From contig NW_005434591.1 in NCBI RefSeq assembly GCF_000315625.1, positions 59,895-123,894 of the forward strand: 64,000 bases of DNA, given 5' to 3'. Positions 30,478 through 45,469 of the stretch are shown one piece after another (position 1 is the first letter of the stretch; each line of letters begins with the position of its first letter). Source of the DNA: Guillardia theta CCMP2712. Lineage: Eukaryota; Protista; Cryptophyta. The position numbers and the translations under genes were made by a program. The notes under the pieces are model-generated. The model made no database searches, was not told the DNA's origin, and saw nothing but the letters and a program-made list of their open reading frames with translations.

Positions 30478-32760
30478 CCACCATCATCATCATCATCATC
30501 ATCATCATTCATCATTCATTGCTATCATCAATTTCATCATCATCGTCATCATCATCATCATCATCATCACCACCACCATCATCATCATCATGATCATCAT
30601 CATGGTCGTCATCATCGCCACCGCCAGGGGTCGTCATGATGATCATCAGCATCATCATCATGAGAATCGCCACCATCATCATGGTCATCGTCTCTGGTCT
30701 CCTCCTGCGTCACGTGGGCCCACGCCTCGAAGAACTGTTGCGAACACAGGGGAGTGAGGAGGGGTGCNNNNNNNNNNNNNNNNNNNNNNNNNNNNNNNNN
30801 NNNNNNNNNNNNNNNNNNNNNNNNNNNNNNNNNNNNNNNNNNNNNNNNNNNNNNNNNNNNNNNNNNNNNNNNNNNNNNNNNNNNNNNNNNNNNNNNNNNN
30901 NNNNNNNNNNNNNNNNNNNNNNNNNNNNNNNNNNNNNNNNNNNNNNNNNNNNNNNNNNNNNNNNNNNNNNNNNNNNNNNNNNNNNNNNNNNNNNNNNNNN
31001 NNNNNNNNNNNNNNNNNNNNNNNNNNNNNNNNNNNNNNNNNNNNNNNNNNNNNNNNNNNNNNNNNNNNNNNNNNNNNNNNNNNNNNNNNNNNNNNNNNNN
31101 NNNNNNNNNNNNNNNNNNNNNNNNNNNNNNNNNNNNNNNNNNNNNNNNNNNNNNNNNNNNNNNNNNNNNNNNNNNNNNNNNNNNNNNNNNNNNNNNNNNN
31201 NNNNNNNNNNNNNNNNNNNNNNNNNNNNNNNNNNNNNNNNNNNNNNNNNNNNNNNNNNNNNNNNNNNNNNNNNNNNNNNNNNNNNNNNNNNNNNNNNNNN
31301 NNNNNNNNNNNNNNNNNNNNNNNNNNNNNNNNNNNNNNNNNNNNNNNNNNNNNNNNNNNNNNNNNNNNNNNNNNNNNNNNNNNNNNNNNNNTCCCCCCCT
31401 CCTCCTTCCTTCCTCCCCTCCCCTCCTCTCTTCTTCCCCTCCCCTCCTCCCTTTCTTCCCCTCCCCGCCTTTCTTCTCCACCCCTCCTCCCCTCCTGTCG
31501 TCCCACCTGCAACTTGCACACATCGTTGGAACGAGACAAGACAGATTTCACAAGCTGGTCCGAGCCCGCCGCTCGCTCCCTTAGCAGCAGCCGCAGCTGG
31601 TCGTAGATGTACAGCAGGTAGTGCGTATCCATCCTGGCATACTTGAGCATCTCAGGTGTCAGGGGCCGGACCCTCCAGTCAGCCAGCTGGTACTGCTTGT
31701 CAGCCTCCTCCTCGCAGAAACGGTGCAGCAGGTAAGCAAGGCCGTAGGAAGGGAACTCAAGGACTCGGCTTGCCTGCCCTGTGTCGAACATGTTGACGAT
31801 ATAGAGACCAAAGTCTCGCTGCAGCCAGCGCACATCGCTGTCCGCGCCATGGAACACCTTGGTGATCTTGGGGTCTGTGAAGGCAGGCAGGAGAAGGTGG
31901 ATACAGCTTCTCAGCTCGATAGTGTCCACTATGAAGTCCTGCTCCCTGGTCGAGATCTGCATCAGGCAGGTGAACCCCTGGAACGACCTCAGGGAGTGGT
32001 GCTCGAGGTCGACTGCGAACTCCTTGCAGCCCGACAGCGTCTTGTGCATGTCAACCAGCTCCTTCTCCGTCGCCACCCAACTGAAGGGCGTCTCCGCCAT
32101 GTCCCTGGGCTTTGCCACTTCCCCTTGAGGGAGGAAGTGGTAGGGCTGGTACTCGATCCCATCGATCTCCTCCTCATACGGGTGCCTTCCGCTCGACAGT
32201 ACATGGTCACCCCTCCCGTGCACCTTGGGCCAGCTCTTGGCGCTGAAGGGAGTGTTGGAGTTGTCCACTACGTCCTCGAACTTCTGCTGAGGCTTCGGAA
32301 TCCCCAGGTCCTCGGGCCGAGTCTTGATCTTTGATGTCTGCTTGAACTTCCCTGCCTGTGCTCTCAGGGCGATCTCCTCTGCGTTCGGCGCCTTCCCGGT
32401 CAGCTCGTCGATCACGTTGTCCACCTTCTCCAGCCTGGCCTCAGCAAAGTCCACCACCCTCTCCAGCAAGTCCTCTGGCTCCCCCGGCAACCCCGCCTCT
32501 TCCTGCCTGCCCCCTCCTCCCTCTACATGCGACACAAGCTTGCTGACTACCGACAGGATCCTGCTCTCGAGCTGGCCTGTCTTCTTCTTGTTGGCTACTC
32601 GCTTCTTAAAGGCGGCGAAGGTGCTGTAGAAGGCATAGTCCGAAGAGGAGGGAAGGTTGTTGGAGGCCCGCACCGCCCCGACAACAGAGGAGCCCAACTG
32701 CTTGCAGATAGCTTCACCGTCGACAGCCGGAACTTCGTCGTCTTGCTTTTCTGCACTCAT
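27977..32760 (-). CDS. RRP6: Exosome 3'-5' exoribonuclease RRP6/EXOSC10 (spans assembly gap)
   Basis: PMC2NT-like N-terminus (AVRASNNLPSSSDYAFY), IPKPQ, HPYEEEI, DEDD-Y motifs AVDLEHHSLRSFQGFTCLMQISTR / FHGADSDVRWLQRDFG / YARMDTHYLLYIYD; HRDC exon ARAHDESTDFVLP; C-terminal FEPFDYS and GKSATF…WPQK*. Confidence 0.95.
30195..30685. repeat. Degenerate (CAT)n tract in RRP6 intron
   Basis: About 0.5 kb of CAT-based repeat next to the gap. Confidence 0.9.
30768..31391. other. Assembly gap (N run)
   Basis: Ns. Confidence 1.
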
Positions 32761-33150
32761 TCTTCAGACTTGGCGTCTTCTCATGCAATCTCAGCTCGAC
32801 TCCTCGTCCCTAGCATGCAAGTCAGCAGCGAGTCAGCAACGAGTCTCCATTCCTGTCATTGATCGATCCTCGGCTCTACTCAACACAAAGCGTGATCCAT
32901 CAAGGAACAATCTAGATGGATTATGTAGTTTGCAGTTGTAGAATGATACAGCTACTTTGTGGCATTCAGCAAGAGCATGACGTTGAGTGATCCACCACCC
33001 TGTCTTTCAGCTGCCTCTGTTGCGCCTGCGTCGCCTTTTCACTCCCTCCCGCCCACTCTCCTTCACCTCTCGCATGTTTCCTACTTCACAACTCTCCCTA
33101 CTTCCCTTGCCTCGTTCTCCCTCCCGTTGTGCTTGTGGATCCTCTTCTCT

Positions 33151-33237
<87 letters not shown>
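33151..33237. repeat. (TCCTGC)n hexamer microsatellite
   Basis: Direct reading. Confidence 0.95.
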
Positions 33238-33854
33238 ACCTTCCTCCTCCCCCTCTGCCACTGCATCGCCATGAAGCTTCACGTGCTCCTTTCGCCTCTC
33301 CTCCTGGCCCTCATCCCCTTTCAAATGTGCGGTATGAGGGTTGTCATCCATGGGGGTAGGGGTACTTGTGTCAAATGACCAGACCTCAGACTCCTGGTAC
33401 AAAAATATGTAAATTGTAGGGTAGGGTGTGCAATGGTAGGGGTCGTACATGCCAACAAGGTCCGGGATTCCTGGTTCAGGCATTTACGAGTCGCATCATG
33501 AAGCGAAGAAGAGGAGGATGAGGGAGGAAGAGGAGGAGAGCAGGAGGGGAGGGAGAAGAGGAGGAAGAGGAGGAAGAGGAAGGGGAAGAGGAGGAAGAGG
33601 AGGAAGAGGAAGGGGGAGAGGGCAAGGGACAGGAGCTGGAGAGCAAGGAGGTTGACAACGGCGGGTTTGATCTGAGATATTGGACAAGAGCTTCTGCTGT
33701 TGAACGTGCACCGGTCACTGCAACGGGTCATACATGCGGCATTGCTAGCAGCTGTCACATCATAACTATCTCAGCAGCCAACGGGCCCTGGCAGGAAGAC
33801 ACATGCTGGAAGACGCATGCTGATAAGAGTACAAAACTCTCCCTACTGCTGGAG

Positions 33855-34373
33855 GATGCGCAAGAGCTCAGCTTGCTGCCTCCTCCTTGTGCTCTTGCTC
33901 CATTGCCTGCAGCTGCAGGCGATGGAGACGATCATGAGCAGTGAGAGGGGAAAGCTCTCGATGCTTCCTAGGAAGATAAGAAGGTTCACACACGGGAAGA
34001 TAATCTGCATGCAGGGCAAGGAGTTTATCAACGAGGTCCCTCAGAGGTCCCTCCTCGTCTCTGATCTCCTCTTGCCTCACACGCTGCTGCTTGTCAGGTG
34101 CTGGAGGGACAGGGTCACCCTGGACACGTCGATACCGCTCGACGACCTAGCAGCAGAGGAGACTTTCATCAAGTTGCTTGAGACAGCAAGGAGGTGAGGG
34201 ATGGTTCTGGCCAGCCCGTCATGGTCTGATCAAACCGTCTGTCAGGATCATGACGTATCCTCGTGCTCGCACAGACTGGTGCTTGCAAAGAGGAAGCGTT
34301 CCATGCCTCGGAGGAGAGCTTGCGCTTGTCGCGGAGTCCATCTTGCAGCAGCAGCAGTATGGACCAGGTCGAC

Positions 34374-34416
<43 letters not shown>

Positions 34417-36621
34417 GACTTCAGTTCATGTGCATTGTGGACAGAGTTCAACGACAAGGTCCAACTCTTCCTTCCGGGAGCCCTGGGCTGGGAGGTCCCG
34501 AAGTCAGGGATAATCTCCGAGTTCGACCTCTACCAGGTGCTCAGCTCATCCCTGCGGTCTGTTGCTGATAGCTTCATGCAGCAAGCAGCATGGGGTATGA
34601 TGCAGATTCAAAAGCTACATCAGTTTGAGTACCTGGAATCAGTGCAGCTCTTTGACAAGGTGGGATGGCATTGCGTTGACCGCGGTCGCTTAACCAGATT
34701 GCTGGCTTCTCAGGGAGAGATTGACGAGTACGATCTAGAAAGGTTGTTCTATGCAGACGAGGATGAAGAGACTGAGGTGCAAGGAATACAGTGTGAATAG
34801 TCTACTGATATCGAGATGCAGATGATACGAGTTTTGTTGAAAGTGAAGAACTGCTACAAGGAGGACCGTGTTGTGTTCGTGGAGATCGGAACGATCCTTG
34901 AGCCAACCCTTACCACAGCACAGAAAGCCATCGAGACGTCCTGTCTGGTGGTTGCAAGAGAAATTAGGTTCCTCATTCCTGCCGGCATGACAAGGTCGAG
35001 GATTGCTTGCTGCTTCTGTCTGCGACCAGGTTGAGATGCGTCACTTTCCGCCATGGGAAACTGGTGATGTCCGAGGCAGGTCTACAGGTTCCGAAGGGCG
35101 AAGTCAAGCTTACGCCATTTCTCTTTGACCTCGCTGATCCAACGCCCTTCACCTGTGACAACCCGTTCAAGAACCATCTCTTCTTCTGGAGGTATCTCGG
35201 AGAGACAAAACAGAGGTGAGCCGATGGCGGTGTTAGGTGGGAGGAGAGGAAAGCAGAAGGCAGGAGAAGGCAGGAGAAGCAAAGGGATGTCTAGTTGACC
35301 TGTGGGTGATGAAAACGATCAAGGAGGATGATTTAACTGTGATTCGTTACCTGGGATCGATTCTCAATGGCATGCAGGAGGGACGCCTCGCACAAGGCTC
35401 TCACGTTGGCATCGGAGACAACTTACAACATCTTCAAGAACAAACTGAGAGAAGTTGTCAATGTCTTGGTGAAGTCGAATCAGTCAGAGCAGCTGCCACC
35501 TGTGTTAGAGCACGGCAAGGAGAACAACTGGAAGAAGATTATCAACTCCTTGAGCTGGTGCTGGCCGTGGTACACGATGGACCCATGGAGTCAGATGCTG
35601 AAGAGAAACAAGATAAGACAAGGGAGCGAGAGGGACGAAGATGAAGGGGATGTTAATGCAGAGAGGAGGTTTATTCGCAATCAGAGGCTTTCTCTAATCG
35701 TCCCGGTGAGAAGCATCAATGGCTCCGGCTTTCAGTTTGTCGATCGCTTCAAGCTTGCGTTAGACAACCCCAGCCAGGTCATGCCGATCTTCACTTGACT
35801 TCAACGTCATCTTGCCTGTTGTTTGCCCTTCTTACTGCTCACAGAGACAATCGCGTTCCCTTCCTCCTCCTCTTACTCCTTCTCCTCCCTCTCCTCCTCT
35901 CCTCCTCTTCCTTCTCCCTCTCCTCTCCCTCTTCTTCCGCTCCTCCTCTTTCGCCTTGTTCTTTGCCTTTCATCGCTGCTCTGACTTTCTTGAGCTCTCA
36001 AGACTCTCAAGACTCTCAAGACTCACATCAAATTTTCAGGTCTTCGAAGGGAAGTACGCGCAAGACTTCCTGGATGCAAGAGCTCAATTAGAGTACAAGA
36101 AGATTCAAGACAAGACCGGCCAAAAGATCTTCTCCTTCCTTCGCTCCCTCGCCTCCAGACGCCGAGTTGAGGACGCCGACCTGGGCGCGATCATAGAGGC
36201 GTTTGAGAAGCACAACATGTCCTATCCCTTCCTCCTCCCCGTTACTAGAAAAGAGGCCCCGGACTACCACCAGATAGTCAAGAAGCCGATGTCTCTATCG
36301 ATGATCAAGGCAAGGTACAACAACCATGAGTACGACGGGAAGGTTGGGATGAAGAACTTCATCAAGGACTTCGAGCTTATCTTCTCCAACGCCTTCACCT
36401 ACAACCGCAAGTCTAGCCTTGTCTACAAGCTTGCGGAGGAAGTCCAGGAGTTTACTGTGGACCAGATACAGGGAGTCCTGCAATCATTGCCGGTGGTTAC
36501 GAGCACCACTGGGAAGAACGTCTCCAACTACGTGAGCCAAACTCTCATGGACGTTAGCGAGGAGGAGGTGGAAGAAGCTCGATTCTCCTCTGTCTCAGCG
36601 TCGAAGCAAGAAAACGACGAT

Positions 36622-36702
<81 letters not shown>

Positions 36703-39091
36703 TAGAACGTGCAGGAGGGTGCAGGTGGTGGTGGTAGCGGTGGCAAGGAAGCTAAAACAATTCTGATGAAGATTGAGATAGGAAAGAAAGAGAGCAGGGG
36801 ACTTGAAAGAACTTCAAAGGAGGAGGCCGAGTGAGAAAGCTGATGCCCATGAGCAGGAGATGCATGGAGGGAGAGATGAAGATCGTGACTGTCACATCCT
36901 CGATAGCGTTGCGGAAGAGAAGATCCTCGGTGAGATCGTCAGATGATCGACATGACGAGTTGTGATGAAGACTGGCAGACTGCCTTGAGCCCAGGGTGAC
37001 ACTAGGAGGATGTTTGATCGAGCATCACTCGTGAGTGAAGTTGTTGTCCTAGCACTTGCAGCATCTGACGAACCTGATGCTTCTCGCGACCTCCCGACAG
37101 GTCCAACTGGTTCCCCGAGAGATTCTTCGACCTTGTCGTGGTGCTGACGTGTGAGAACGGGTGAATGGCTCTTGATGCTTCGCATGCCGCGGGGTGAGGA
37201 GAGAGATTGTACTGACTGTCTCATCCTATGCAGGATGCTGTACAAGAGACTGAAGGCGAGGGACTACGAAGAGAAGAAGGTTTGTCGTTTCCTCTCCCCG
37301 CAGCTTCTCCATCCTGTCTCATGCTGTCCCCTGCTGTATCCTTGATGCTGCTTCAGATTACAGAGAACGTCGACTGTGAGATCATGCAGGTATGTTTTGT
37401 TCGCTCGCTCGCGAGAGTGCTGAAGTCACCGTCAAGACGGTCTTACAGGAAGCCTTGGAGAGCTACAAGCCTGACAAGATCCTGACCTTCAAGTCTGAGA
37501 CCGAGAAAGACATGGAACAGGCTCATGCTGCCGTTAGCGACTTCATCAGGAGCTGGGGGCGGCAAGATGAGACTAAGGAACGAGCTGCTCCACAAAACAA
37601 CATGGAGCTAGAGCAGCGTCCTGTGCGAAAGTCAGGCAAGCAGGTCCCTCCCTCGCCCTCCCTCCGCGGCATGAAGTCCAAGACCTCGGAGGAGAAACAG
37701 GTAGAGAGCCCCCGGATGTCGCAACCGAAGCAGAGGAGGGGAGGGGAGGACGGCGATCTCAAGGAGAACTGGAGTGCTCTAACGACTGCAGCCATCGGTG
37801 ACCCCTAACACGCCGCGACCTGCTCTGACTGACCGCGGCAATGTAGAGCACATGTTAGACATCTGGAACGATATCGGCGGAAACTCTCTAGCGTTTCCTT
37901 TTCATCACCCTGTGATATGAGACGAGACGCGGAAGGAGAAGCTGATCGCGGTGCTGCTGCAGGTCACGAAGCGACAAGCGCTGGACTACAAGGACGTGAT
38001 CCGCCGTCCTATGGCGCTCTCAAACGTCATGAAGAAGCTTGAGGGCGCACAGTACAAGGTGAGGAGGAAGAACTTTGTGTGGAGATGATTGAAATGGCGC
38101 TTTCAGTCCCTTGTTGAGTTCTTCTCGGATATGGACGTCATCTTTAGAAACGCCATGCTGTATAATAAGGTCGGCTCCACGTTTCATCAACTTTATCATC
38201 CTCCCCCCACTCTTCTCCCTCCACCTCCTCTGCCCCTACTTTGTGACCAGTTTTCTTCCCCTTCATCCTGCCGCAAGCTCTCCTTCCTTGCAATCTGCGC
38301 ATGCCCGGGCATCCAGCTACCCTTGATCACTCGCTCTACACTCCTCCTCCCATCGCATGCAATATAGCTTGCAATCGCAGCATTCCTTCTATCCTCCTTC
38401 CCTTCCCCTCCCATCCAACCTCTCCATCTCGATCCGACTGCCTCCCTTACCGTGGAACCAGGAGGATTCTGAAATCGCCATCGCGGCAAGACAACTACAA
38501 GCTATACTCCATCAGCACTGCAGGTCATCGACTCTCTTCCCTTCTCCCTCTCCGTTTTCCTCCCTGTCCCCAACTCCCTCGACCATTCGCCCTCCTCCCT
38601 GTTCCCTCCTCCCTCCTCCCTGTTCCCTCCTCCCTGTTCCCTCCTCCCTCCTCCCTGTTCCCTCCTCCCTGTTCCCCTGTTCCCTCCTCCCTCCTCCCTC
38701 CTCCCTCCTCCCTCCTCCCTCCTCCCTCCTCCCTCCTCCCTCCTCCCTCCTCACTCCTCCCTCCTCCCTCCTCCCTCCTCCCTCCTCCCTCGCCCCAGCT
38801 CACTTCTTTGCCAACAGGAGGATCCTGCCACAGACAGCGGACAAGCTCCTGGCCGAGATCACTCCAAAGTCTCCAGGTAGTCGTCGAGAGCTCTGCCCTC
38901 CCAGACACTCCTCTCCACACGCTCCTCCTCCTCTCCCTTGAGGATTGCTCCCCTGTATCCTTCAACCTCCTTCTCCTTGATCATCAATCACGATCGACTG
39001 AACTGCTCATGCAGCGGAGGACCTCGTTCCAGCTGCTGCGCTCCACGTCAAGGCCACCAAGACCCCAACTGATCCGATGCAACTCGGTTGA
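33855..39091 (+). CDS. Large spliced locus: signal-peptide-like leader, unknown N-terminal region, bromodomain, AK6/Fap7-like domain, second bromodomain (may be one gene or two)
   Basis: Bromo1 YPFLLPVTRKEAPDYHQIVKKPMSL…LIFSNAFTYN (~36180-36470); AK6 exons DCHILD, GGCLIEHH, WFPERFFDLVVVLTCEN, LYKRLKARDYEEKK, ENVDCEIMQ, LQEALESY (36856-37560); Bromo2 FPFHHP/VTKRQALDYKDVIRRPMAL…DMDVIFRNAMLYN/EDSEIAIAARQL (37847-38525). Confidence 0.8.
36625..36702. repeat. (CAG)n tract, in frame as polyQ after bromodomain 1
   Basis: CAG run followed by CAA TAG. Confidence 0.95.
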
Positions 39092-39214
39092 CATCAGTTG
39101 CCAAGGGAGTCAAGTCGTTCGATCGGCTGCTGGCTCCTCAACTTGACTAACTTCCGTGATTGTCTCTTAATCAACTTGTGAACTATGAGCCTGTTGGTTA
39201 CCTTCCGAAGTTCC

Positions 39215-39860
39215 GATCATGCCACTCAGCGGCCCGGCGCGTCGGGGCCCTACTGGTCAGTGACCCTCAGCGGCCGCCTGCCAGGTGCCCCCGCCCGGCA
39301 ACCGGCCGGGCGGCGGCAACCGGCCGGGCGGCGGCCAGTGCCGGAACTTTGGAACGCTTCGTCAGTGTCGGACCGGGCGTGACACGGGGGGGGCGGGCCC
39401 CGCACCCACCGGCCCGTCGAGCCTCGGAGGGCCTGCCGCTGAGTGGCCGGGCCGCCGCGGCCACGCGGCCCGCCGGCCCGGGCCGCCGGGCCCGGTGCCG
39501 CCGTAGTAGAACCGTGTTGAACTTGATAATTGAACCTGGGCTTCAAGTTCCCGGAAGCGGCACTGCGCCTAGCGCGGCGCGGCCTAGCCGCGCGGCGCCC
39601 GGGTACAGTACGGTACTACGTACTCGGGGCCGCAACGGTAACTCAGTACGCCGGGTACAAACTCATAGCTGCCTAAGTTACTAGTCACTTGACTTTGAGC
39701 CTCAGTTATGAGCCTCGCCCCCAAGTTTGTCTGATTGTTAAAAAAAGATACAGTACCACTAAATAATATTTAACATTACATGGTTTTAAAATTTCTATCA
39801 CAGGCTCTGTATTCGTTACGAATTATCGAAAAGTGTTTTAAATGGTACGCAATTCCGCCA
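39215..39860. repeat. GC-rich palindrome-dense element, inverted relative of 1125-2135
   Basis: GC arm 39215-39660 plus AT core 39720-39850 resembling 1700-1790 on the opposite strand. Confidence 0.5.
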
Positions 39861-45369: not shown

Positions 45370-45469
45370 NNNNNNNNNNNNNNNNNNNNNNNNNNNNNNN
45401 NNNNNNNNNNNNNNNNNNNNNNNNNNNNNNNNNNNNNNNNNNNNNNNNNNNNNNNNNNNNNNNNNNNNN
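45370..45469. other. Assembly gap (N run)
   Basis: Ns. Confidence 1.

What the first reader, a model, noticed from the sequence alone, without database searches (positions are those of the whole stretch)
36180..38525. AK6/Fap7 domain fused to a bromodomain, probably sandwiched between two
Seen: spliced exons reconstruct most of an AK6/Fap7/hCINAP domain (…DEDRDCHILD…EEKI / DCLEPRVTLGGCLIEHH / WFPERFFDLVVVLTCEN / LYKRLKARDYEEKK / ENVDCEIMQ / LQEALESYKPDKI). This reads without a stop through a linker (37560-37797) into a complete second bromodomain, and a first bromodomain lies just upstream. Known: AK6/Fap7 is normally a ~170-190 aa standalone ATPase/adenylate kinase acting on uS11 (Rps14) in 40S maturation; bromodomains read acetyl-lysine. 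Inference: a chromatin-reader/nucleotide-binding fusion that may couple acetylated chromatin to ribosome biogenesis or nucleotide sensing. I know of no described example.
Basis: partly seen in the sequence, partly recalled or inferred. Interest (0 to 1): 0.85.

Follow-up and report, generated by a model that had tools for sequence, protein, structure and literature searches.

The report
Dead AK6 domain between two bromodomains
In the alga Guillardia theta, a copy of the ribosome-assembly ATPase AK6/Fap7 that has lost its ATP-binding loop sits in the same reading frame as a second bromodomain and probably a first one, an undescribed domain combination that is more likely a binding module than the proposed nucleotide sensor.

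Summary
The window is Guillardia theta CCMP2712 scaffold JH993047.1.

- **AK6-like exons:** six short plus-strand exons (36782/36851-37565) encode a clear AK6/Fap7 homologue (E 2e-25 to human AK6; Pfam AAA_18 3.8e-20).
- **Bromodomains:** bromodomain 1 lies upstream (Pfam 9e-25). A complete four-exon bromodomain 2 lies downstream.
- **AK6 to BD2 link:** the last AK6 exon stays open for 77 codons to a GT donor and joins BD2 in frame. A Hanusia phi transcript fragment conserves this linker up to the same exon end. I rate this link at about 0.85-0.9.
- **BD1 to AK6 link:** this rests on an in-frame GT-AG intron (36532-36781) that removes a polyQ tract and a TAG. Word shares in RNA-like runs fit it, but they also fit one two-gene layout. 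I rate it at about 0.6.
- **Missing P-loop:** the AK6 part matches only human residues 41-167. Strand β1, the Walker A loop and helix α1 are absent, and no match was found anywhere in the 64 kb. All 19 other family-invariant positions are kept, including the LID, NMP and Walker B residues that bind uS11 in Fap7.

I therefore read it as a conserved non-catalytic binding module inside an acetyl-lysine reader, not a nucleotide sensor. The architecture was found only in Guillardia and Hanusia. Read laying failed, so no splice junction was seen directly.

The parts
33817..35777 (+). Tentative upstream exons 1-5 of the same gene (33817-34193, 34425-34776, 34822-34967, 35030-35191, 35378-35777). They begin with a signal-peptide-like leader. 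The rest has no recognisable domain.
   Evidence: All junctions are GT-AG with matching phases and give one stop-free frame into the BD1 exon. Pfam and the Atlas found nothing. No transcript evidence.
36040..36531 (+). Exon carrying bromodomain 1 (core about 36187-36441). It ends at the donor TAC|gtgagc.
   Evidence: Pfam Bromodomain 9.1e-25. Best solved relatives are the polybromo-1, BRD4, RSC4, TAF1 and GCN5 bromodomains. The DY and YN acetyl-lysine pocket residues are present.
36532..36781 (+). Putative intron. If it is retained, the BD1 frame continues through an acidic stretch and a (CAG)27 polyQ tract to TAG at 36703-36705.
   Evidence: Donor GTGAGC and acceptor TAG| are in frame. Five RNA-like runs hold only 8 of the 27 sampled words of 36532-36856.
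36782..36929 (+). First AK6-like exon. Homology is solid from about 36845 (…AHEQEMHGGRDEDRDCHILD…). The 5' 20 codons are only weakly alpha1/beta2-like. M36860 is the alternative start if this is a separate gene.
   Evidence: In my own AK6 HMM the upstream extension adds only about 4 bits.
36979..37389 (+). AK6-like exons b-e (36979-37030, 37101-37160, 37234-37279, 37357-37389). They carry Walker B (LIEHH), FPERFF, the core strand and the LID (RLKARDYEEKKITENVDCEI).
   Evidence: They reproduce P0001 exactly. Invariant residues are kept. In Hanusia phi 31 of 37 residues of exons c-d are identical.
37437..37797 (+). Last AK6-like exon. It holds the C-terminal helices to about 37565, then a 77-codon linker with conserved blocks PPSPSLRG and KQRRGG.D.DLKENW.ALT.AAI, which lead into BD2.
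   Evidence: The frame is open to the donor ATCG|gtgacc. The Hanusia phi transcript fragment P0005 is conserved up to AAI and then diverges, which marks the same exon end.
37847..38523 (+). Bromodomain 2 in four exons (37847-37911, 37963-38058, 38107-38169, 38462-38523).
   Evidence: Pfam Bromodomain profile 22-52 (E 1.2e-5) and 53-73 (E 0.0049) lie on adjacent exons. The spliced domain aligns to BD1 at z 23.
38818..39090 (+). Two C-terminal tail exons (38818-38876, 39015-39090), with stop TGA at 39088-39090.
   Evidence: In-frame GT-AG model. Model only.

Best explanation
This is one multi-exon nuclear gene of Guillardia theta. My in-frame model has 18 exons and 1016 aa, spanning 33817-39090. 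Its product carries, in order, an unrecognised N-terminal region, bromodomain 1, an N-terminally truncated AK6/Fap7-like domain, a roughly 80-residue linker, bromodomain 2 and a short tail.

Shown: the AK6-like part equals human AK6 residues 41-167 and has no Walker A loop, no beta1 and no alpha1. It keeps every other family-invariant residue. It is conserved in the sister genus Hanusia, while a retained intron there shows no similarity. Both bromodomains keep their acetyl-lysine pocket residues.

Inferred: the AK6-like part cannot work as an ATPase or adenylate kinase. It acts as a non-catalytic binding module (a pseudoenzyme). [quoted passage not shown] Without ATP-driven release, the module would hold uS11, or another basic tail, constitutively, next to two acetyl-lysine readers.

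Likely origin (inferred): an AK6 copy was captured into a bromodomain gene, and the 5' part of its first exon, with the start codon and P-loop, was lost to the intron 36532-36781.
For: Homology: P0001 against human AK6, E 2e-25, residues 41-167. Pfam AAA_18 3.8e-20, profile positions 34-128 only.

Missing P-loop: there is no AK6-type GxxxxGK[ST] in six frames of the 64 kb. An N-terminal AK6 sub-HMM finds nothing better than E 2.8 in any ORF piece. In my AK6 HMM the score starts at profile position 40-45 whatever upstream piece is added.

Retained residues: 19 of 19 columns that are at least 90% conserved outside the P-loop are kept. These include the Walker B His, FPER, the LID R/Y/K/E and N..EI.

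Fap7-Rps14 interface: it is formed by the LID, NMP, Walker B and C-terminal extension, and ATP hydrolysis releases Rps14 (PMC4019466).

Continuity into BD2: the frame is open, the GT-AG junction is in frame, and the Hanusia phi fragment P0005 conserves the linker blocks up to the same exon end with in-frame indels. BD2 exons hit consecutive Pfam profile segments.

Expression: RNA-like runs from three or more studies hold 0.40-0.43 of the words of 35900-39100, against 0.40 expected for exons only.

BD1 to AK6: the strong donor GTGAGC at 36532 joins in frame to 36782. RNA-like runs hold 0.30 of 36532-36856. The expectation is about 0.25 for this model, 0.61 for two genes with ordinary UTRs and 1.0 for a retained intron.

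Fold: the Atlas model of P0001 has pLDDT 0.81 and TM 0.90-0.92 to AK6 clusters.
Against: The 0.30 word share would also fit a transcript that carries 36532-36702 and nothing after the CAG repeat (expected about 0.38; arithmetic), so BD1 and the AK6-like part could lie in different mRNAs. GenBank models BD1 and the AK6 part as separate partial genes. In AK6, beta1 is to my knowledge the central strand of the sheet, so a domain without it may not fold like AK6 despite the predicted model. The binding-module function is inference only. I could not show that G. theta has a separate canonical AK6. The run kinds 'RNA?' are the tool's guess.
Confidence: 0.6

Rival explanations
1. There are two adjacent genes. 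Gene A (N-terminal region, BD1, acidic and polyQ tail) ends at TAG 36703. Gene B starts at M36860 and encodes a P-loop-less AK6-like domain fused to BD2 only. The fusion is then AK6-like plus one bromodomain, not a sandwich.
For: The BD1 frame stays open for 57 codons past the donor into an acidic and polyQ tail that looks like an activation domain, then stops. An in-frame ATG lies at 36860. GenBank keeps BD1 and AK6 as separate partial models. A transcript holding 36532-36702 but little beyond would give about 0.38 of the words, close to the observed 0.30.
Against: It needs a 3' UTR, an intergenic spacer, a promoter and a 5' UTR all within about 155 nt. With ordinary UTRs the expected word share is 0.61, against 0.30 observed in five runs. 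The only consensus donor in the stretch (GTGAGC) sits at 36532 and joins in frame to two possible acceptors. Twenty-seven of the 57 open codons are CAG repeat, which has no stop in any frame. Another intron of this model also carries a CTG repeat.
Confidence: 0.25
2. The AK6-like exons are a decaying, exonised remnant of a dead AK6 copy. They serve only as spacer sequence between two bromodomains, with no function of their own.
For: The catalytic P-loop end is gone. The first 20 codons of the first AK6-like exon are barely recognisable. The fusion was seen only in two closely related genera.
Against: All 19 non-P-loop invariant residues are intact. Exons c-e are about 85% identical between Guillardia and Hanusia, while the Hanusia retained intron shows no similarity and the linker has indels. 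That pattern indicates purifying selection on the domain itself.
Confidence: 0.1
3. This is an ordinary standalone AK6 gene whose P-loop exon and stop codon were missed, flanked by unrelated bromodomain genes, or else a misassembly.
For: AK6 is normally a 170-200 aa standalone protein. The closest canonical relatives carry the P-loop in a separate first exon (L002, L004, L005).
Against: No P-loop exon was found in 64 kb by motif or by HMM. There is no stop between the AK6 C-terminus and the donor at 37798. Hanusia conserves the linker up to that donor. There are no assembly gaps between 31392 and 45369.
Confidence: 0.05

Closest known systems
Human AK6/hCINAP (PDB 1RKB, 3IIJ) and yeast or archaeal Fap7 (4CVN/4CW7)
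   Same: Clear sequence homology (E 2e-25). The Walker B His, FPER motif, LID Arg/Tyr/Lys/Glu, NMP acidic stretch and C-terminal helices are retained. These are the elements that contact uS11/Rps14 in Fap7 (PMC4019466).
   Different: It lacks residues 1-40 (beta1, Walker A, alpha1, beta2). The Walker B Asp is Glu. It is embedded in a protein of about 1000 aa instead of being a 170-200 aa standalone enzyme. No ATPase activity is expected.
Tandem-bromodomain readers (Rsc4, polybromo-1, BRD4/BET, TAF1)
   Same: There are two bromodomains with intact acetyl-lysine pocket residues. BD1's best solved matches are in these proteins.
   Different: The spacer between the bromodomains is a folded AK6-like domain plus linker (about 290 aa). 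No ET, HMG or kinase parts were detected. The N-terminal 480 aa match nothing.
Human TAF9/AK6 shared locus
   Same: AK6 shares a transcription unit and exonic sequence with a chromatin and transcription gene (PMC7749173). The Atlas also lists chordate AK6 fragment clusters of about 131 aa.
   Different: In humans the two products are read in different frames and are unrelated proteins. Here the AK6-like part is in frame with bromodomains in one polypeptide.
ATAD2/Yta7 (AAA+ ATPase with bromodomain; from my own knowledge)
   Same: A P-loop NTPase-fold domain and a bromodomain lie in one chromatin protein.
   Different: It belongs to a different NTPase class (AAA+ hexamer) and is catalytically active. 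It is unrelated to AK6.
Other AK6 fusions in databases: Ascomycota Peptidase_C78+AAA_18, AAA_18+CM_2 (P0030), Macrostomum BORCS7+AAA_18+YL1 (P0011)
   Same: They show that the AK6 domain does occur in longer predicted proteins.
   Different: Those checked (P0011, P0030) keep the P-loop. None has a bromodomain. Some may be merged gene models.

Membership tests
AK6/Fap7 (Pfam AAA_18, P-loop NTPase) | Overall sequence homology above the family threshold | tested here: met
   Pfam AAA_18 scores 73.1 bits against a cut-off of 29.4. E is 2e-25 to human AK6.
AK6/Fap7 (Pfam AAA_18, P-loop NTPase) | Walker A loop GxxxxGK[ST] preceded by strand beta1 | tested here: not met
   The match covers profile positions 34-128 and human residues 41-167 only. 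No motif or N-terminal HMM match exists in 64 kb.
AK6/Fap7 (Pfam AAA_18, P-loop NTPase) | Walker B strand with the family His (hCINAP VDYH) | tested here: met
   The sequence is LIEHH. The His is kept and the Asp is replaced by Glu.
AK6/Fap7 (Pfam AAA_18, P-loop NTPase) | LID residues Arg/Tyr/Lys/Glu and the acidic NMP region that contact Rps14 | tested here: met
   RLKARDYEEKKITENV and RDEDRDCHILD are present. 19 of 19 invariant non-P-loop columns are kept. The interface is described in PMC4019466.
AK6/Fap7 (Pfam AAA_18, P-loop NTPase) | ATPase or adenylate kinase activity, and uS11 binding | not testable with these tools
   This needs recombinant protein.
Bromodomain (Pfam PF00439) | BD1: profile match and the pocket Tyr and Asn | tested here: met
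   E 9.1e-25 over profile positions 3-84. PDYH and FTYN are present.
Bromodomain (Pfam PF00439) | BD2: complete domain after splicing | tested here: met
   Adjacent exons hit profile 22-52 and 53-73. The spliced BD2 aligns to BD1 from PF..PVT to YN at z 23. The whole spliced domain could not be sent to Pfam.
BET family | ET domain after the two bromodomains | tested here: inconclusive
   Only the BD2 exons were scanned in Pfam. The two tail exons after BD2 were not scanned, and that tail is only about 50 aa.

The most novel reading that the evidence does not exclude
The protein is imported into the periplastidial compartment or nucleomorph. Its model starts with a signal-peptide-like leader followed by a non-aromatic +1 residue. 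There it would read acetylated nucleomorph histones while its dead Fap7 module holds the compartment's uS11. That would physically couple the relict nucleus's chromatin to assembly of its own 40S subunits. It would also be a concrete, testable entry into the open question of which host-encoded histone-mark readers serve the nucleomorph (PMC4822330).
Probability: 0.06. Interest if true: 0.8.

Novelty: new variant of a known kind. Interest (0 to 1): 0.45.

Why it matters
If confirmed, this is a new domain architecture: an acetyl-lysine reader that carries a catalytically dead ribosome-assembly chaperone domain. It would be a natural separation-of-function version of Fap7, with the uS11-binding surface kept and the ATP switch removed. 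That makes it useful for asking what the AK6 fold does beyond ATP hydrolysis. It also adds to the repeated association of AK6 with transcription and chromatin genes, as at the human TAF9/AK6 locus. On the practical side, the G. theta annotation splits this locus into two partial models and misses BD2 and the N-terminal half.

Tried and rejected
**Reads and other expression evidence**
- After that, no letters of 38679-38797 were sent as a query to any search tool. They were present only as passive target in two local whole-window scans.

**Homologue searches**
- The search for homologous proteins with the linker exon found only P0001.
- The BD1 region, searched over lengths of 163-520 aa, found nothing.
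- Hanusia P0005 found only canonical AK6 proteins and none with a bromodomain.
- In the exhaustive HMMER search with P0001, the 10 longer or closest of the 150 listed hits that I scanned in Pfam had no bromodomain. The long hits were YL1/BORCS7 or chorismate-mutase fusions.
- The metagenome scan found nothing.

**Search for the P-loop**
- The top 'P-loop-less' hits P0002 and P0003 are ordinary AK6 genes with the P-loop exon upstream of an intron. P0081 is the same.
- I tested two candidate P-loop relics: GGGGSGGKEAKT at 36727 in another frame, and PVVTSTTGKN at the end of the BD1 exon. Neither scores with an AK6 N-terminal HMM, so I dropped both.
- Homology-guided choice among 87 in-frame donor and acceptor pairs could not settle the BD1-AK6 junction. 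Scores differ by less than 10 bits.

**Other**
- A canonical G. theta AK6 could not be located. Cluster look-ups of 20 close hits gave no Guillardia name.
- The N-terminal exons gave no Pfam or Atlas lead.
- Paper searches for a bromodomain-AK6 combination found only incidental co-mentions.
Full report
**Source and annotation.** The window is identical to Guillardia theta CCMP2712 scaffold JH993047.1 (GCA_000315625.1), with 0 mismatches over 12.7 kb. GenBank has only fragments at this locus. One is a 99-aa partial bromodomain model at window 36157-36453. The other is the 133-aa partial model EKX38532.1/GUITHDRAFT_43249 (P0001, Pfam AAA_18) at 36851-37565. Nothing is annotated over the second bromodomain or over 32050-36156.

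**The AK6-like exons are real.** Six exons with canonical GT-AG borders reproduce P0001 exactly. P0001 matches human AK6/hCINAP (1rkb, 3iij) at E 2e-25 and Pfam AAA_18 at 3.8e-20. The Atlas model of this sequence has pLDDT 0.81 and TM 0.90-0.92 to AK6 clusters.

**The P-loop end is missing.**
- The alignments begin at human residue 41 and at Pfam profile position 34.
- A six-frame motif scan of all 64 kb finds no AK6-type GxxxxGK[ST].
- I built an AK6 HMM from 83 canonical homologues. It scores 188.6 bits from M36860 onward, and any upstream sequence adds only 4-7 bits.
- A sub-HMM of the N-terminal 40 residues finds nothing better than E 2.8, at unrelated places, in any stop-to-stop piece of the window.
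- I considered two P-loop-like strings, GGGGSGGKE at 36727 (out of frame) and VVTSTTGKN at the end of the BD1 exon. Neither has statistical support.

**The rest of the AK6 domain is intact.** Of the 24 alignment columns that are at least 90% conserved in canonical AK6, all 19 outside the P-loop are identical in G. theta. They include the Walker B His (LIEHH, with Asp changed to Glu), FPER, and the LID R..R.Y...K..E.

**Continuity into bromodomain 2.**
- The last AK6 exon (37437-37797) stays open for 77 codons beyond the AK6 homology, up to the donor ATCG|gtgacc. The other two frames have 3 and 4 stops over the same stretch.
- Joining to the acceptor tag|AG at 37847 keeps the frame. It leads through three more short exons to a complete bromodomain.
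- Exons 37963-38058 and 38107-38169 hit Pfam Bromodomain at profile positions 22-52 and 53-73, back to back.
- The spliced domain aligns to BD1 from PF..PVT to YN at z = 23 over shuffles.
- Independent support comes from P0005, a Hanusia phi transcript fragment in EukProt. It covers the AK6-like exons c-f and the linker. Exons c-d are 31/37 identical. The linker has in-frame indels but conserved blocks (PPSPSLRG; KQRRGG.D.DLKENW.ALT.AAI). Similarity stops exactly at ...AAI, where G. theta has its donor. In Hanusia the sequence then continues as a G codon formed with GT, which is a retained intron. A second retained intron in P0005 shows no similarity to the G. theta intron, so the conservation of the exons reflects selection.
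- I put the AK6-like to BD2 fusion at about 0.85-0.9.

**Link to bromodomain 1.**
- BD1 (Pfam 9.1e-25) has its closest solved relatives in the polybromo-1, BRD4, RSC4, TAF1 and GCN5 bromodomains.
- BD1 ends in an exon whose only consensus donor (TAC|gtgagc, 36532) joins in frame to tag|GAA at 36782 or to cag|GAG at 36857.
- If the intron is not spliced, the frame runs through an acidic stretch and a (CAG)27 polyQ tract to TAG at 36703.
- Indirect evidence comes from the look-up of sequencing runs. RNA-like contig runs from at least three studies hold 0.40-0.43 of the sampled 31-mers of 35900-39100, and exactly 8 of the 27 words (0.30) of 36532-36856. Two of those words are also held by unrelated organisms, which I take to be CAG-repeat words.
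- My k-mer expectations for the two stretches are:

| Layout | 35900-39100 | 36532-36856 |
|---|---|---|
| Acceptor at 36782 | 0.40 | 0.18 plus the repeat words, about 0.25 |
| Acceptor at 36857 | 0.38 | 0.0 |
| Two genes with ordinary UTRs | 0.45 | 0.61 |
| Retained intron | 0.48 | 1.0 |
| Observed | 0.40-0.43 | 0.30 |

- The 36782 model fits best. However, a transcript that holds 36532-36702 and nothing after the repeat would give about 0.38 and cannot be excluded.
- I put the BD1 to AK6-like junction at about 0.6.

**Upstream of BD1.** Five further exons can be chained with matching phases from an ATG at 33817, giving an 18-exon, 1016-aa stop-free model. The remaining 450 aa have no Pfam or Atlas match. 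This part is a model only.

**Distribution.**
- The exhaustive HMMER search with P0001 gave 1342 AK6 relatives. Apart from the Hanusia fragment at 70%, the best is 61% identical.
- The 10 longer or closest of the 150 listed hits that I scanned in Pfam have no bromodomain. The long ones are BORCS7-AK6-YL1 in Macrostomum and AK6 with chorismate mutase.
- Word-based searches in the 118-374 aa and 163-520 aa ranges and a metagenome scan found no further example.
- The closest canonical relatives (L002, L004, L005) have the P-loop in exon 1 and no bromodomain neighbours.
- Paper searches found no description of the combination.
- Known parallels are limited. Human TAF9 and AK6 share exons but are read in different frames (PMC7749173). 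The Atlas lists chordate AK6 fragment clusters of about 131 aa and an Ascomycota Peptidase_C78+AAA_18 fusion.

**Mechanism.** In the Fap7-Rps14 structure the interface is formed by the LID, the NMP region, Walker B residues and the C-terminal extension. The basic Rps14 tail fills the AMP site, and ATP hydrolysis drives release (PMC4019466). The G. theta domain keeps those elements and lacks the ATP site. The best-supported reading is therefore a pseudoenzyme. It would be a constitutive binder of uS11, or of another basic tail, built into a protein with one or two acetyl-lysine readers. This is an inference, and I rate the specific uS11 idea at about 0.25. Whether the fold survives the loss of what is, to my knowledge, the central beta1 strand is unknown. 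I could not fold the spliced segment.

**Limits.**
- No junction was observed directly.
- The 'RNA?' label of the runs is the tool's guess.
- I could not locate a canonical AK6 elsewhere in the G. theta genome.
- Searches for relatives were limited by query length windows.
- After, no letters of places 38679-38797 were sent as a query to any search tool. They were present only as passive target in two local whole-window scans.

**Verdict.** The fusion is probably real and undescribed, but the proposed nucleotide-sensing function is not supported. This is a lineage-restricted new domain architecture with a dead AK6 module.

Noticed in passing
window 33817-33925: The in-frame gene model starts with MLIRVQNSPYCWRMRKSSACCLLLVLLLHCLQLQA|METIM… This has a basic n-region, a 13-residue hydrophobic core and an A at -1, followed by a Ser/Lys/Arg-rich stretch with a non-aromatic +1 residue. 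That is the pattern reported for cryptophyte periplastid-compartment leaders (my own knowledge). It is an odd feature for a bromodomain protein.
   Followed up: partly
window 34360-34415 and 36622-36702: Two predicted introns of the same gene carry long perfect trinucleotide repeats, (CTG)n and (CAG)27. The second is in frame with the upstream exon and would add a polyQ tail if the intron were retained.
   Followed up: partly
window 35800-35990, 38175-38460, 38524-38817: The long introns of this gene are extremely CT-rich, low-complexity tracts (CCTCCTCCCT-type repeats). The short introns (45-77 nt) are not.
   Followed up: no
window 39220-39640: A block of very GC-rich palindromic and tandem-repeat sequence lies about 130 nt after the stop codon (for example the 18-nt CGGCAACCGGCCGGGCGG twice, plus overlapping palindromes). 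An AT-rich stretch follows.
   Followed up: partly
window 30768-31391 and 45370-45469: These are assembly gaps (runs of N). The first one explains the apparent low-GC bin at 30-32 kb.
   Followed up: yes
P0011 (UniRef A0A1I8JMI9, Macrostomum lignano); Atlas cluster 'DUF1671-domain-containing protein': Other AK6 fusions exist in databases: BORCS7+AAA_18+YL1 in a flatworm, which may be a merged model, and Peptidase_C78+AAA_18 in 57 Ascomycota proteins.
   Followed up: no
window 37437 vs 37449: There are two candidate acceptors 12 nt apart (caag| and acag|). The G. theta model uses the first (…EIMQTVLQEAL…, the same length as human AK6). The Hanusia transcript lacks these four residues (…EIMQEAH…).
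   Followed up: no
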